From Guillardia theta CCMP2712 (taxonomy: Eukaryota; Protista; Cryptophyta), in the NCBI RefSeq assembly GCF_000315625.1, contig NW_005434641.1:13321-75350 (forward strand): a stretch of DNA of 62,030 nt, given 5' to 3'. Both the position numbers and the translations under genes were made by a program. The notes under the pieces are model-generated. The model worked only from the letters and a program-made list of their open reading frames with translations. It ran no database searches and was not told where the DNA came from. Of the stretch, positions 27,798 to 38,234 are shown piece by piece; within the stretch, counting starts at the first letter, position 1; each line of letters begins with the position of its first letter.

Positions 27798-30700
27798 ATG
27801 GAGTCAACACATTCGATGATGCTTGACAGGCTCAAGGAGGTTGTGGATAGCTCACAGAAGGACAGAAACTCACTGCGAAACATTGAGTCTGTTATGCACA
27901 GTTGTTGGAATCGAGCGAACCATGCTCCGAACGTGCAGCCGTTGTGCAAGGATGGTTTGTTGGAGCTCTGTGCTTACATCTTGAACAAGTACTTGGACTC
28001 GGACCTGAACGATCTCTGCGAGAACACGTGTGGAGCCATCTACAATTGCTCAAGGAGGCTTCCATCCAGCCGTGTGGTCCGTCAGAGGATGCTGAGCGCA
28101 GGCATCTATCCTCTGATCCCTCGATTGTTCTCACACGAGGTCTGGATGATTCGTTTCTACGGGACATTGATCTCCGCTCACTGCGCAGCCTCTGGGCTGT
28201 CAAATCACCAGAAGGTGATATGCTCTCTGGAATCCATCGAATGGCTGTGTAAGTGTCTGGACAGCACGCTCAAGGATGAAGGCTTTGGGGGGTCTGGCTG
28301 GAGCATCGAGGAGGTCATGTCTGCCGCGGCTTCCCTTTGTACTCTTCCCGATAATCGAGCCGGGTTCCTTGAGAAGGGCGGGTCGAGATTGTCCTTGCAG
28401 GCTCTCAGCAGCGTGATGGAGGAGCAGGGGAACGAGCTGGAGGTGGAGTTGCGAGTCATCACGCTGACCCTCGCACGCATCTCAAACGACAGGCTGTTCA
28501 AGGAGAGCTGCACGAGTGAACATGTCGAGCTGATGGAATCGCTCATTGACAGTGAGATCATCGCGGTGAAGAGCAACATCATGTCAGTCTTGGCGAACGT
28601 CGGGTCGGAGAAAGCTTCTCTTGAAGCCGCCTTCAAGCAAGCCTGCGAATGCGCCAGTGCGAAATGGAATCGATCTCAGCTCTCCATCGTTGGGAAGGGG
28701 AGGGTAGGCAAGACAGCATTCGTGAGGGCGATCTTGCAGAAACCCTTTGAGCACACGGAGAGTACGATCGGCATGGAGGGGATGACCTGTGAAGTGAGTT
28801 CTGTCTTCTCTGGGAAAATGTGGTGGAAAGAGCAGACAAACATTCACTCAGAGCTGGAACTTGTTCAAGCAAGACAGGCGGCAGCTTTTGCAAAGGGCAT
28901 GCAAACGGCAGAGAGTGACCTGCTCTCAAGCTTGGAGTTCGAAGCAGAAAATGGAGACGGAGGAGAAATGTCTGAAGACATTTGGGAGCAAGGACAGAAG
29001 AGCGGAGCCATTAGCAGCGAGACAGCAGACAAGAGCATGGGGGAGAGAGGATTTGAAGCCAAACAAAGCTCTGAGCCGATTGTGAGTCAATACAAACAAG
29101 ATCTTGTGGTTGAATGCTTACAAGATGAAGGGTCCGATGAGTCGATCATCTTTGAGTTGTGGGACTACGGGGGCCAGGACGTGTTTTATGCTCTTTTCCA
29201 CCTCTTTATCACCAGGTTCGGCATCTTTGCTGTGTTGTTCAATATGGAAGATCTCATCACTGGGGACGAGAGGCTACAGAAGGAATGTCTTGACTTCATC
29301 GAATTTTGGTTGAGCACAATCTACTTGCATACAAGCCAGTCTTCCAGCGAAAGTTGCGCTCCAATCGTGATCGTTGGAACTCACAAGGACATCATTTCTC
29401 ATCCTCTTCAGCACCTTTACATCTCCCGCATCCTTCATCGCACCTTCTGCGGACACCTCGCCTGGCCCCACGTTCAGATCTTCGACCAGAGGTCAAGCTC
29501 CTTCGTTGCCTCCTCCATGGATGACGTAGATGTCTGGCTGAAAGAGCAGTTTGACCTCGTCGACGCTGACTCATCCTCCACTCTTGAGCTTGAAGAATTG
29601 CAAGCGTTCTTTGGGAAATATGCAGACGCTTCACTGGTCAAGGAGTTCTTCGAGTCGGTAGACGATAACAAGGACGGGAAGATCAGCTTGGCCGAGTTCA
29701 AGGCAGCCACCTGGGAGGTTCTCACCTTCTTCCCGGTGGACAACACTAAGGGTCACGTCGACCCCGTCATCCCCCAAATCCTCAGCGTTGTGGAGCAAGT
29801 TGCGATGAATGCCGACTACATCCAGCAGCGCGTTCCTTACGCGTGGATCAAGTGCCTGGACTCAATAAAGCAATCGGGGAAGGATGTGCTGAAACTGTCG
29901 GAGGTGGAGGAGATCGCAGCCAAGAGCGGGATGCCGATGTCGAAGAGACTTGGGCTGACAAGGGAGGTAGAGGGCATGCTGGACTACTTTCACAACCTCG
30001 GCCGGCTGATGCACCACAAGGAGAAGACTCTGAGGGACTATGTCATCGCCAGGCCGACAGATTTCATCATCCGTCCGGCGACCCAGGTCGTGTGTGAGCA
30101 CGATCTTCACAAGACGGCTCAGCAGCTGGAAGCAAGAAAAATGATCAATGAGTGGAAGAGTCTGACGATGAGCGCCGTGCTGAGCCGGAGGTTGCTCCCT
30201 GTGCTCTGGAAGGACTACTTGCAACAGATGGACTTGCTCGAGCTTCTCTGCGTCAAGTTTGGCATCTTCATCCCTCTCAAGCCCCAAGAGACAGACGTGT
30301 CCATGTCCTTTCTCGTCCCCACCCTTCTTCGAGAGCAGCAGCTCAGCAATGTGGACAACCAGGCCTTGTCCTGTTTCTTGCTTTTCTCGTCGGATGCTGA
30401 GTTTCTGAGAGAGCAAAAGGGAGTCGTTGCGCGCTCGGACCTGACCAGTCGCTTCGTCCCCAACAGCCTCTTTGCCAGCGTAATCGGGCAGGCGATTGCA
30501 TGGAGCCAGAGCACGGGGGGGATGCAGCACAAAGTGAGCAAGACAGAGGCGACGTTAGCGTTCGGAAAGCACCGCTTCCTCCTGCAAGATCTGCGAGCTG
30601 AGAAATGTTTCAAGCTGGTGATCTTTGTCCAGAACCCCAAGAACGTCCTGCTGCGACTCCTCAAGATCATTCAGACGGTGATCGACCGGTGCATGCCACG

Positions 30701-36800: not shown

Positions 36801-38234
36801 CACGCGCAGGGATTTGTACTCTTGTCTTGGACTGTCTGATCCTGTTGAGATCTCGCAGTTTTGGGAGGGTGGGAATGAAAGGATTTTGCAAGAGCGGGTC
36901 GCGCATGAGTTCACAGGTTTACAGACTGACCAGCAGGTTCTGAGGTTTCTGCTCGGACGAGATGGAGTTGGAGGTGTTCTGAGAGAGGACCCTTCAAGAC
37001 GAAGGACGGTCTTGCAAAGCCTGAAAGAGTGCTCACTCTTCACAGAGCAAGAGACAGTCATGGGGCTGCATGTCAAGATAGATCGGATGGCTGAGAACAT
37101 GAGGCAGCTGAAGAAAGAGATTTCGGAAATGAAGCCTTTTATCAATGACGGAATGCAAGTTTTGATTTACCAAGCTGCCACGAATGAAAGGATCAACAAG
37201 GAGCTGTGCAAGCTCCGAAGCTCTCTGTCATCAATATCTAAGAGGGACGGTGATCTGATCAATCAATCCCAGCAACTCTGTAGCAAAGTTGCAGGACTGT
37301 GTAATGTTATGCACGACATGTCCAGACAGGTGCAGGGACACTGCTCACAACACATGCAAGAAATCTCACAGAGATTCGATTTGCTTATCCAACAATGCCA
37401 GCGAGGGTCGGATGATGAGAAGAAAGAGATTTTAGAGAGGCTGCTAGAGCAGGTCGGGGTTATGCAGCAACAGTTGGGCAACGTGGAAGATCAAGTCAAT
37501 GACATCAAGAAAAGAATGGAGGAGGCGATCAACGCCAGTCGGTCTGCAGTCTGGCTGCTGAATCAGGCGTGCTTGTCGGAAGCACGAGGCAAGATGGCGC
37601 CATACCTGGTGTGGATCTACCCGCAGGAAGAGGTGGAGTCGTGGAATCCCACGGACTGGATCACCAACAAGCTCTGCATCAAATTCATCTGCCCAGTCAG
37701 TCTCAAGTTGGCCGACAAGACGTTCGAAACGTTCACGGTGAAGGAGAGCGTCCAACTGTTCGCAGAGATGATCCCCCCAACTCTTAATGCCCTCAAACCG
37801 GCACTAGAAAAAGTCAGGTGGCTCAACTTGCCCCTTGCAGGCCTCTCTTCTCTGGAATCAGAGCTGAAGAAACAAAGAGCTTTCAGCCAGAAGCTGACGG
37901 AGCTCGAAGCAGTCGACATGATGTCTTCATGGGCGCAGAAGCACTTCCAAGGGGTGAGCTCGGACGCGCAGGAGCCAGATCTCAACTGCAACAGGAAAGG
38001 AATCAAAGCGCTGGTTCAATTCATGGAGTCGGTGGACAGGTTGAGATGAACTAGTGTTGCACTGGCTCGGTTCATGCTGACGTAGGTGGCAGGAACTGGA
38101 CGGCAAAGACCGGGCTTCAGTTGGTGTCGGCACAAGATGGGACAGTCGAGTGGGTCCACCCTGAAGTAGCCAAGGACTTCAAGGAGAAAGGACGGGAGAT
38201 GCTCCGAGGCCGACGGGACCATTTGACTCTGTGA
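33812..38234 (+). CDS. Micro-exon-encoded Cys-rich domain - charged helix (EEAERKAR)n - pseudokinase - coiled coil - C-terminal domain; apparent frameshift at about 35950
   Basis: Exon 33812-33829, 16 micro-exons, exon 35325-35360 and an exon from 35421 splice into an open frame leading into ORF 35472. The kinase fold in ORF 35842..38049 has WMGISADN for HRDLKPEN and NFT for DFG. Last intron 38040-38091, stop 38232-38234. Confidence 0.7.
33923..35268 (+). other. Array of 16 micro-exons (15 of 3 nt, one of 6 nt)
   Basis: AG|NNN|GTRAG (GTAAAT once) recurs roughly every 90 nt. Exon starts: 33923, 34024, 34120, 34228, 34314, 34402, 34496, 34589, 34683, 34760, 34844, 34943, 35041, 35097, 35179 (6 nt) and 35266. 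Confidence 0.85.
35775..36175 (+). repeat. Coding 24-bp tandem repeat (gccagggaggaggccgagcgcaag; AREEAERK) interrupted by a duplicated unique segment
   Basis: Directly visible. The unique segment ggtggacgccaatgg...ttttagcg occurs at about 35841 and about 36175. Confidence 0.9.

What the first reader, a model, noticed from the sequence alone, without database searches (positions are those of the whole stretch)
27798..38234. Candidate algal innate-immunity/cell-death cluster: Roco-TIR + 4HB-kinase + head-to-head micro-exon pseudokinase
Seen: three adjacent signalling genes whose catalytic parts lie in long uninterrupted exons, unlike the intron-dense housekeeping neighbours. The intact kinase (ATG 33585/33576, - strand) and the pseudokinase (ATG 33812, + strand) are divergent, with only about 230 bp between them. 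A TPR gene is divergent from the Roco gene. Established: TIR domains, kinase/pseudokinase pairs (RIPK3/MLKL) and head-to-head sensor/executor pairs recur in immune systems, and ROCO families have been proposed as immune candidates in brown algae. Inference: a sensor (splice-diversified Cys-rich pseudokinase) / executor (4HB-kinase) / TIR module.
Basis: inference. Interest (0 to 1): 0.75.

Follow-up and report, generated by a model that had tools for sequence, protein, structure and literature searches.

The report
Three adjacent algal immune-type signalling genes
In the alga Guillardia theta, three neighbouring genes carry domains typical of innate immunity and cell death (a Roco-TIR enzyme, an MLKL-like helical bundle on a live kinase, and a dead kinase), but no sister copy of any of them elsewhere in the genome has the same neighbours, so nothing yet shows that they work together.

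Summary
The window is Guillardia theta CCMP2712 (C33:13321-75350).

- **Gene 1, GUITHDRAFT_108203 (27798-31892, +):** ARM-like N-terminus, Roc, EF-hand pair, COR, TIR and a CaaX-like tail. Its TIR is 60% identical to that of paralogue L1IYH1. A 2026 preprint showed that TIR makes cADPR and depletes NAD+. The catalytic Glu is conserved here (E1124).
- **Gene 2 (32209-33585, -):** a four-helix bundle, an intact TKL kinase and a C-terminal membrane anchor. The bundle links to Pfam MLKL_N/RPW8 only through intermediate relatives and by fold.
- **Gene 3, GUITHDRAFT_108205:** a true pseudokinase (HRD to WMG, DFG to NFT). Its real 5' end is the upstream micro-exon chain, so its ATG (33812) lies 226 bp from the kinase ATG, head to head.

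The "cluster/module" reading is not supported. The genome has 11 bundle-kinase loci at 8 places, about 23 Roco/TIR places and 3 pseudokinase loci. Only this locus shows adjacency, and nothing turned up within 15-20 kb of the closest paralogues. Cross-species synteny and co-expression could not be tested.

This scan had already noted MLKL-like kinases and Roco-TIR genes elsewhere in this genome. The parts are interesting new variants; the linkage is unproven.

The parts
27798..31892 (+). Gene 1, GUITHDRAFT_108203 (P0001, 1324 aa). Exon 27798-31715, 120-nt intron, last exon 31836-31892. Layout: ARM-like N-terminus, Roc, EF-hand pair, COR, TIR, C-terminal ACCCVS.
   Evidence: ORF; Pfam; NCBI model with 99% identity; last exon located.
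28683..29390 (+). Roc GTPase domain (res 296-531), split by an insert of about 85 residues. Motifs read: P-loop GKGRVGKT, DYGGQ, THKD.
   Evidence: Pfam Roc 42.9 bits and Ras. The family profile hits LRRK2 Roc and the Chlorobium Roco protein in PDB. Motifs read.
29535..29708 (+). EF-hand pair (res 580-637), lying between Roc and COR.
   Evidence: EF-hand_7 37.6 bits, EF-hand_1 34.6 bits; centrin and calmodulin hits.
29835..30329 (+). COR-A domain (res 680-844).
   Evidence: COR-A 24 bits, below the cut-off. It matches in 4 of 5 family members, best E 2.2e-7.
30900..31571 (+). TIR domain, about res 1035-1258; putative catalytic Glu1124 in VLMEW (window 31167-31169).
   Evidence: TIR_2 at E 9e-5, below the cut-off, in 4 of 5 family members. 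60% identical to the assayed TIR of L1IYH1 = P0003. Weak Foldseek top hit to the RPS4 TIR.
32209..33585 (-). Gene 2: single-exon protein of 458 aa with a four-helix bundle, a TKL kinase and a tail anchor.
   Evidence: ORF; Pkinase 152 bits; nearest solved kinases are CTR1, MAP3K12, IRAK4 and RAF.
33223..33585 (-). N-terminal four-helix bundle (res 1-121), MLKL_N/RPW8-like.
   Evidence: AlphaFold gives four helices at pLDDT about 85. Best TM-scores are to the MLKL N-terminal domain. Z is 10-11.5 to MLKL, AtMLKL3, NRG1 CC-R and Rx. Atlas lead. Of the 20 relatives found with the profile, 6 hit MLKL_N (best 1.3e-6) and 1 hits RPW8.
32383..33084 (-). Protein kinase domain, catalytically intact.
   Evidence: Pfam; motifs read.
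32242..32307 (-). C-terminal hydrophobic segment of 22 residues (predicted tail anchor), followed by an acidic tail.
   Evidence: Read. Similar tails occur in the C67 and C23 paralogues. No membrane-helix predictor was run.
33586..33811 (.). Divergent intergenic region of 226 bp (putative bidirectional promoter), with a 19-bp tandem duplication at 33643-33688.
   Evidence: The repeat is unique in the genome.
33812..38234 (+). Gene 3, GUITHDRAFT_108205 extended at its 5' end. Exon 33812-33829; about 15 single-codon exons and one 6-nt exon (33923-35268); exons 35325-35360 and 35421-35841; 70-nt intron; long exon 35912-38040; last exon 38094-38234.
   Evidence: Micro-exon list; public model P0006; collinearity with P0007; last exon.
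35772..36175 (+). 24-nt tandem repeat array encoding EAERKARE units. It is interrupted by the 70-nt intron 35842-35911, which copies the junction between the repeats and the kinase domain.
36277..36822 (+). Pseudokinase domain: HRD to WMG, catalytic-loop Lys to Ala, DFG to NFT, no Gly-rich loop.
   Evidence: Pkinase 46 bits; alignment with the kinase; alignment with paralogues.
36940..38040 (+). Coiled-coil region plus a conserved C-terminal region of unknown fold.
   Evidence: Conserved in the C60 and C56 paralogues. No Pfam, PDB or atlas match.

Best explanation
These are three separate genes from cryptophyte-expanded, immune or cell-death-type signalling families. They happen to be neighbours at this one locus and are not a conserved module.

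**Gene 1** is a switch protein, probably lipid-anchored, regulated by GTP (Roc-COR) and Ca2+ (EF-hand pair). Its output is a TIR domain that cleaves NAD+ to cADPR. That activity is shown for the paralogue's TIR and inferred here.

**Gene 2** is a tail-anchored, catalytically competent TKL kinase with an MLKL_N/RPW8-type four-helix bundle at its N-terminus. The kinase probably controls the bundle, or is controlled by it, at a membrane. This is inferred.

**Gene 3** is a scaffold-type pseudokinase. It has a Cys-rich N-terminal module encoded by micro-exons, a module that other receptor-like families also carry. It also has a charged repeat region, coiled coils and an unknown conserved C-terminal region.

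Genes 2 and 3 share a 226-bp divergent promoter region and may be co-transcribed. The adjacency itself is locus-specific.
For: - **Identity:** G. theta models GUITHDRAFT_108203 and GUITHDRAFT_108205.
- **Domains:**
- **TIR:** P0003 equals L1IYH1. It was assayed as active, with cADPR production and NAD+ depletion, catalytic E1141. The window TIR is 60% identical and keeps the Glu at 1124.
- **Bundle:**
- **Pseudokinase:**
- **No conserved linkage:**
  - tblastn of all three proteins against 30-45 kb around the closest paralogues found none of the other two families. The places were Roco C63; kinase C67, C44, C51 and the four C23 copies; pseudokinase C60 and C56.
  - Genome census: 11 bundle-kinase loci at 8 places, about 23 Roc-COR/TIR places and 3 pseudokinase loci. 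Only this locus shows adjacency.
  - The divergent neighbour of the C56 pseudokinase is an EGF-repeat gene.
- **Not tandem duplicates:** the two kinase domains are unrelated lineages, 18% identical, one TKL-like and the other AGC-like in its best hits.
- **Kinase density:** kinase-like segments are very numerous, 836 first-look candidates, so kinase neighbours are not rare.
Against: - Under naive uniform placement, a bundle-kinase within 10 kb of a Roco/TIR place is expected 0.04 times. A pseudokinase-family member within 10 kb of a bundle-kinase is expected 0.006 times. So the triple is unlikely by pure chance.
- On C23 a Roco-TIR lies 49 kb from the four-copy bundle-kinase array.
- Earlier unchecked notes of this scan report other mixed 'immune-type' neighbourhoods in this genome.
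- The Cys-rich module of gene 3 also heads a Roco-TIR relative (P0005), which hints at a shared pathway.
- The upstream neighbours are lectin-like and SRCR genes.
- Co-expression and synteny in other cryptophytes were not testable.
Confidence: 0.65

Rival explanations
1. One reading: a functional three-gene immune or cell-death module. The Cys-rich pseudokinase senses, the bundle-kinase executes by attacking a membrane, and the Roco-TIR supplies an NAD+-derived or Ca2+ signal. The genes stay linked for co-regulation or co-inheritance.
For: All three domain types are confirmed or supported. Genes 2 and 3 are head to head with 226 bp between them. The adjacency is improbable under uniform placement (counts).
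Against: No paralogous locus repeats any pairwise linkage. The analogy with RIPK3/MLKL is inverted, because the bundle is on the active kinase. There is no evidence of splice diversification. The finding was picked after the fact among about 1,600 windows. There are no expression or interaction data.
Confidence: 0.12
2. Only the divergent pair is a functional unit. The tail-anchored bundle-kinase and the pseudokinase are co-expressed from a bidirectional promoter, and the pseudokinase acts as regulator, scaffold or decoy of the kinase. The Roco-TIR gene is an unrelated convergent neighbour.
For: The two ATGs are 226 bp apart on opposite strands. Established knowledge: kinase-pseudokinase pairs are a common regulatory design. 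The window copy is the most degenerate of its family, while C60 keeps WLD..K..N and DFD. That fits a shift to a non-catalytic role.
Against: Neither the C60 nor the C56 pseudokinase paralogue has a kinase as divergent neighbour. No bundle-kinase paralogue has a pseudokinase neighbour. Inference, not measured here: short divergent intergenic regions are common in compact protist genomes.
Confidence: 0.15
3. None of the three acts in immunity or cell death. They are ordinary Ca2+/NAD+ and phosphorylation signalling proteins, for example in membrane traffic, stress or the light response, and their domains merely resemble immune ones.
For: Atlas neighbours of the bundle include MCAfunc, cell-number-regulator and PUB N-terminal clusters; that those are not death executors is my own recollection, not tested. 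Z scores near 11 are within the unspecific range for helical bundles. From my own knowledge, cADPR is a general Ca2+-mobilising messenger. The kinase is active, unlike MLKL.
Against: The paralogue's TIR depletes NAD+ on expression. The families are lineage-expanded, intron-poor and variable, as immune families tend to be.
Confidence: 0.2

Closest known systems
ROCO proteins (LRRK2, Chlorobium tepidum Roco, Ectocarpus LRR-ROCO)
   Same: A Roc GTPase followed by COR. The family profile hits LRRK2 Roc and the C. tepidum Roco protein in PDB. ROCO proteins have been proposed as immune candidates in brown algae (PMC4421812).
   Different: There is no LRR and no kinase. Roc is split by an insert, an EF-hand pair lies between Roc and COR, the output domain is a catalytic-type TIR, and the protein ends in a CaaX-like tail.
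Catalytic TIR domains (SARM1, plant TIRs, Thoeris ThsB) and G. theta L1IYH1 (GUITHDRAFT_112954)
   Same: The TIR region is 60% identical to L1IYH1, which makes cADPR and depletes NAD+ (bioRxiv 10.64898/2026.04.20.719644, Table S4 row 34). The same VLMEW Glu is present.
   Different: The window protein itself has not been assayed. The domain is long (about 225 aa) and scores below the Pfam TIR_2 cut-off. It has no sequence hit in PDB.
MLKL, plant MLKLs (AtMLKL3, Pm13), RPW8/CC-R and fungal HeLo-like bundles
   Same: An N-terminal four-helix bundle, then a linker and a kinase fold. The best natural structural matches are MLKL, AtMLKL3, NRG1 CC-R and Rx. Relatives hit Pfam MLKL_N and RPW8.
   Different: The kinase domain is catalytically intact, whereas MLKL is a pseudokinase by definition. 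A C-terminal membrane anchor is present. The window sequence itself does not reach the MLKL_N model.
RIPK3-MLKL kinase/pseudokinase pair
   Same: An active kinase and a pseudokinase are encoded side by side, and a bundle of MLKL type is present.
   Different: The bundle is on the kinase, not on the pseudokinase. RHIM motifs were not sought. The pairing is not conserved at paralogous loci.
Other G. theta families headed by micro-exon-coded Cys-rich modules
   Same: Gene 3 begins with a chain of single-codon exons. Its motif CCNCAxxRGxxGYDxxxCxxCK also heads the Roco-TIR relative P0005.
   Different: Here the module is joined to a pseudokinase with a coiled coil and an unknown C-terminal region.

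Membership tests
ROCO | Roc (Ras-of-complex) GTPase domain | tested here: met
   Pfam Roc 42.9 bits against a cut-off of 27; PDB LRRK2 Roc hits with the family profile; G1, G3 and G4 motifs read.
ROCO | COR domain directly after Roc | tested here: inconclusive
   COR-A scores 24 bits in the window protein, below the 35.3 cut-off. It matches in 4 of 5 family members, best E 2.2e-7. An EF-hand pair lies between Roc and COR.
TIR (catalytic NADase/cyclase type) | TIR fold recognised by profile or structure | tested here: inconclusive
   TIR_2 scores 20.7-23.4 bits, below the cut-off of 28. The AlphaFold model is poor (pLDDT 50), with a weak top hit to the RPS4 TIR at E 0.19. No PDB sequence hit.
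TIR (catalytic NADase/cyclase type) | Close homology to an experimentally active TIR, with the catalytic Glu conserved | tested here: met
   60% identity over 256 aa to P0003 = L1IYH1. That protein is active, with cADPR production and NAD+ depletion, catalytic E1141. The window protein has Glu1124 in the same VLMEW motif.
MLKL / MLKL_N-RPW8 bundle superfamily | N-terminal four-helix bundle | tested here: met
   Four helices (3-24, 29-52, 58-84, 89-121) at pLDDT about 85. TM 0.60-0.65 to MLKL N-terminal domains. Z 10.7-11.5 to MLKL, AtMLKL3 and NRG1 CC-R, within the range where helical bundles match unspecifically.
MLKL / MLKL_N-RPW8 bundle superfamily | Sequence homology to Pfam MLKL_N | tested here: inconclusive
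   The window sequence does not match, and one G. theta paralogue matches at E 0.065. Of 20 relatives found with the family profile, 6 match MLKL_N (best 1.3e-6) and 1 matches RPW8. The link is transitive only.
MLKL | C-terminal pseudokinase domain (catalytically dead) | tested here: not met
   GSGGFG, VAVK, HRDIKPQN, DFG and APE are all present. Pkinase 152 bits.
Pseudokinase (gene 3) | Kinase fold lacking the catalytic Asp (HRD) and the Mg-binding Asp (DFG) | tested here: met
   WMGISADN and NFT in place of HRDxKxxN and DFG. Pkinase 46 bits.
Conserved immune gene cluster or sensor-executor pair | Linkage of the same families repeated at paralogous or orthologous loci | tested here: not met
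   Paralogues: none of the other families lies within 15-20 kb, and the genome census shows adjacency only here. Orthologous loci were not testable, because two metagenome scans found no relative.
Conserved immune gene cluster or sensor-executor pair | Co-expression or physical interaction | not testable with these tools

The most novel reading that the evidence does not exclude
The locus is a working unicellular cell-death circuit. A lipid-anchored, Ca2+- and GTP-gated Roco-TIR makes cADPR or depletes NAD+. A tail-anchored MLKL-like bundle-kinase acts as the membrane executioner. A divergently transcribed pseudokinase with a Cys-rich head acts as its sensor or brake. This would be a necroptosis-like pathway assembled independently in a cryptophyte.
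Probability: 0.1. Interest if true: 0.85.

Novelty: new variant of a known kind. Interest (0 to 1): 0.42.

Why it matters
If these genes act in defence or regulated death, they would show that a single-celled secondary alga combines TIR NAD+ chemistry, Roco switches and MLKL-type bundles. All three are known from animal, plant and fungal immunity, but here they occur in new layouts:

- a bundle on a live, membrane-anchored kinase;
- a Roc-EF-hand-COR-TIR protein with a lipid-anchor motif.

The closest paralogue's TIR has already been shown to be active, so biochemical tests are within reach. The negative result on linkage also matters: adjacency alone should not be read as a module in a genome where these families are large.

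Tried and rejected
- **Word search with the kinase N-terminus:** no hit.
- **Pfam and PDB sequence searches of the N-terminal bundle:** nothing significant for the window sequence itself.
- **PDB sequence search of the TIR region:** blank.
- **AlphaFold of the TIR region with 5 sequences:** pLDDT 50, so the fold search is only suggestive.
- **Atlas search of the pseudokinase C-terminal region:** nothing usable.
- **Two metagenome scans, with the pseudokinase and the Roco-TIR alignments:** no relatives, so cross-species synteny stayed untested.
- **Contigs carrying the bundle-kinase relatives P0008 and P0027:** 5.8 and 7.3 kb, no DNA returned, and no called neighbour gene has a Pfam hit on record.
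- **A second round of fetching paralogue DNA:** The C99, C29, C112 and C21 paralogue neighbourhoods were therefore checked only through genome-wide hit coordinates.
- **Gene identifiers:** found in no paper.
- **Idea rejected:** that genes 2 and 3 are diverged tandem duplicates. They are 18% identical and belong to different kinase groups.
- I did not search with a joined (spliced) model of the pseudokinase N-terminus. The exons were compared one by one by reference, and the single-codon exons were only read.
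Full report
**Organism and coordinates.** The window is G000:C33:13321-75350 of an 87.1-Mb assembly in 669 contigs. The Roco ORF is 99% identical to NCBI GUITHDRAFT_108203 of Guillardia theta CCMP2712, and the third gene is GUITHDRAFT_108205. Earlier notes of this scan had named the same organism. The protein matches confirm it.

**Observation.**
- Pfam finds Roc (42.9 bits) and an EF-hand pair in the first, plus sub-threshold COR-A (24 bits) and TIR_2 (20.7 bits).
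- It finds a strong protein kinase domain (152 bits) in the second and a weak one (46 bits) in the third.

**Gene 1, Roco-TIR.**
- A profile of the family, built from the window protein, two Hanusia phi proteins, the G. theta paralogue and one environmental protein, hits LRRK2 Roc and the Chlorobium Roco protein in PDB. It also hits centrins and calmodulins for the EF-hand pair.
- COR-A and TIR_2 each match in four of five members, with best E of 2.2e-7 and 9e-5.
- The TIR region has no PDB sequence hit. Its AlphaFold model is poor (pLDDT 50). The best Foldseek rows are plant TIR domains, but at E 0.19 or worse.
- The decisive evidence comes from a paper. The closest paralogue, P0003 (GUITHDRAFT_112954, on C63), is 63% identical overall and 60% identical in the TIR region. 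It is UniProt L1IYH1. Its TIR (residues 1049-1273, catalytic residue 1141) was expressed and scored active, producing cADPR and depleting NAD+ (bioRxiv 10.64898/2026.04.20.719644, text and Table S4 row 34).
- I checked that P0003 carries the quoted motif and that its VLMEW Glu is residue 1141. The window protein has the same motif, with the Glu at 1124.
- The public model adds a last exon (31836-31892) ending in ACCCVS. Relatives end in GCCSLM and ACCVMM. These are CaaX-like tails, which suggests a lipid anchor. This is inference.

**Gene 2, bundle-kinase.**
- The kinase has every catalytic motif. Its nearest solved relatives are TKL kinases: CTR1, MAP3K12, IRAK4 and RAF.
- It ends in a 22-residue hydrophobic segment followed by an acidic tail. 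Paralogues on C67 and C23 have similar tails.
- The first 165 residues have no Pfam or word-search match.
- With six G. theta paralogues as the alignment, AlphaFold predicts four helices for residues 3-121 at pLDDT about 85.
- Foldseek gives no significant E-value, but the highest TM-scores (0.56-0.65, rmsd 3.2-4.3) are to MLKL N-terminal domains.
- The wide structural search puts human and mouse MLKL, AtMLKL3, NRG1 CC-R, Rx and Sw-5b at Z 10.2-11.5, among designed bundles. The tool warns that this range is unspecific for helical bundles.
- The language-model atlas points to MLKL_N, MCAfunc and RPW8 clusters at 0.80, which counts only as a lead.
- The family profile, searched against 1.84 billion representatives, found 20 proteins. 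Ten carry a kinase domain, six match Pfam MLKL_N (best 1.3e-6) and one matches RPW8. One is from the cryptophyte Proteomonas sulcata. P0008 is 36% identical to the window protein over its full length.
- So the '4HB' call is supported by fold and by transitive homology. The protein is not an MLKL, because its kinase is live.

**Gene 3, pseudokinase.**
- Aligned with gene 2, HRDIKPQN reads WMGISADN and DFG reads NFT.
- The two G. theta paralogues differ from the window copy. C60 keeps WLDVKPAN and DFD. C56 has WLAVKPTN and DFD, plus an in-frame TGA. The window copy is therefore the most degenerate.
- The public model starts at ATG 35472 and splices out 35842-35911. That 70-nt stretch copies the junction between the EAERKARE repeat array and the kinase domain.
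- Upstream lie fifteen AG-NNN-GT single-codon exons, mostly 80-110 nt apart, and a 6-nt exon read from the sequence. Exons 35325-35360 and 35421 onward follow.
- P0007 is a 797-aa protein from a 2.7-kb JGI contig, identical to the C60 paralogue over its long exon. It has a Cys-rich N-terminus.
- Exon 35325-35360 aligns to P0007 residues 54-65 (E 1e-4), and the next exon aligns to residues 67-102. The preceding codons F, CC, N match P0007 residues 50-53 by eye.
- The micro-exon chain therefore belongs to this gene, and ATG 33812 is a plausible start, 226 bp from the kinase ATG.
- I did not search with a joined spliced model. Exons were compared singly.
- The last 370 residues are conserved among the paralogues but match nothing known.

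- I located the paralogues: kinase, pseudokinase and Roco-TIR.
- I then fetched 30-45 kb around the closest ones: C63; C67, C44, C51 and C23; C60 and C56. Searching all three proteins, domain by domain, by tblastn found only the expected family at each place.
- Genome-wide, the bundle profile finds 11 loci at 8 places. TIR_2, COR-A and Roc searches, plus C63, give about 23 Roc-COR/TIR places. The pseudokinase family has 3 loci.
- Only the window shows any two of these within 10 kb. The next nearest case is C23, with a Roco-TIR at 9-12 kb and four bundle-kinases at 60-75 kb.
- The divergent neighbour of the C56 pseudokinase is an EGF-repeat gene. No kinase was found beside the C60 copy.
- Under uniform placement the expected number of bundle-kinase/Roco-TIR pairs within 10 kb is about 0.04, and of pseudokinase/bundle-kinase pairs about 0.006. 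The triple is therefore unlikely by pure chance.
- Against that, the locus was picked after the fact among some 1,600 windows. Kinase-like segments are very common (836 first-look candidates). The linkage is also not a property of the families.
- Orthologous synteny could not be tested. Hanusia is known only from transcripts, and two metagenome scans found nothing. No expression data were available, and no paper mentions these gene identifiers.

**Mechanism.**
- Shown: domain content; catalytic residues present or absent; activity of the paralogue's TIR.
- Inferred for gene 1: it is a membrane-tethered GTP/Ca2+ switch whose TIR turns NAD+ into cADPR.
- Inferred for gene 2: it is a tail-anchored kinase that regulates, or is regulated by, an MLKL-type bundle at the membrane.
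- Inferred for gene 3: it is a non-catalytic scaffold whose Cys-rich head is a module shared with other receptor-like families.
- The same motif, CCNCAxxRGxxGYDxxxCxxCK, heads the Roco-TIR relative P0005. This hints at a common pathway more than the adjacency does.

**Comparison and novelty.**
- Each part is a new variant of a known kind: Roc-EF-hand-COR-TIR-CaaX, and bundle plus active kinase plus tail anchor.
- The MLKL/HeLo/RPW8 bundle family is described in animals, plants and fungi (for example PMC10197012 and PMC10951266, listed). I found no paper on it in cryptophytes.
- This scan had already noted MLKL-like kinases, Roco-TIR genes and micro-exon heads at other places in this genome.

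**Verdict.** The domain readings are supported. The module is not supported, though it is not excluded.

Noticed in passing
window 7311-17237 (-) and 17557-18708 (-): A 3308-aa uninterrupted ORF with ten F5/8-type-C (discoidin) and five Laminin_G_3 domains. Next to it is an ORF with two SRCR domains. These are lectin and scavenger-receptor-type genes, just upstream of the three signalling genes.
   Followed up: partly
window 31836-31892 (+); P0003 and P0005 C-termini: The Roco-TIR subfamily ends in Cys-rich CaaX-like tails (ACCCVS, GCCSLM, ACCVMM). This suggests prenylation or palmitoylation and a membrane location.
   Followed up: partly
window 35176-35471 (+); P0007 res 50-73; P0005 res 3-24: The Cys-rich motif CCNCAxxRGxxGYDxxxCxxCK heads both the pseudokinase family and an environmental Roco-TIR relative. 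It has no Pfam match.
   Followed up: partly
window 35772-36245 (+): A 24-nt repeat array (EAERKARE units) with 1-nt indels. It is interrupted by a 70-nt copy of the junction between the repeats and the kinase domain, which the public model removes as an intron. The frame depends on that splice.
   Followed up: partly
window 33643-33688: A perfect 19-bp tandem duplication (2.4 copies) in the 226-bp divergent intergenic region. The unit occurs nowhere else in the genome.
   Followed up: yes
G000:C23:60172-75191 (L008, L027, L009): Four near-identical bundle-kinase genes in a 15-kb array. Copies 2 and 3 are head to head. Two copies have DLG instead of DFG, and one has HRDIT instead of HRDIK.
   Followed up: partly
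G000:C44:298066-300363 and C51:306837-309218: In these two bundle-kinase paralogues the open frame runs on for about 330 residues past the kinase (766 and 794 aa), and by eye that tail looks like armadillo-type repeats. The tail was not scanned against Pfam; the ARM hits are on other proteins. So the family may vary its C-terminal module (TM tail or ARM-like).
   Followed up: no
G000:C56:350542-352890: This pseudokinase paralogue has an in-frame TGA and a long KLKEQEEQR repeat array in place of EAERKARE.
   Followed up: no
window 36940-38234 (+): The C-terminal part of the pseudokinase, about 415 aa, is conserved in all three paralogues. It includes the motifs APYLVWIYP, FICPVSL and GTVEWVHP. 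It has no match in Pfam, PDB or the atlas.
   Followed up: partly
window 50608-52719 (-): A 703-aa ORF with a DUF229 domain, E 1e-46.
   Followed up: no
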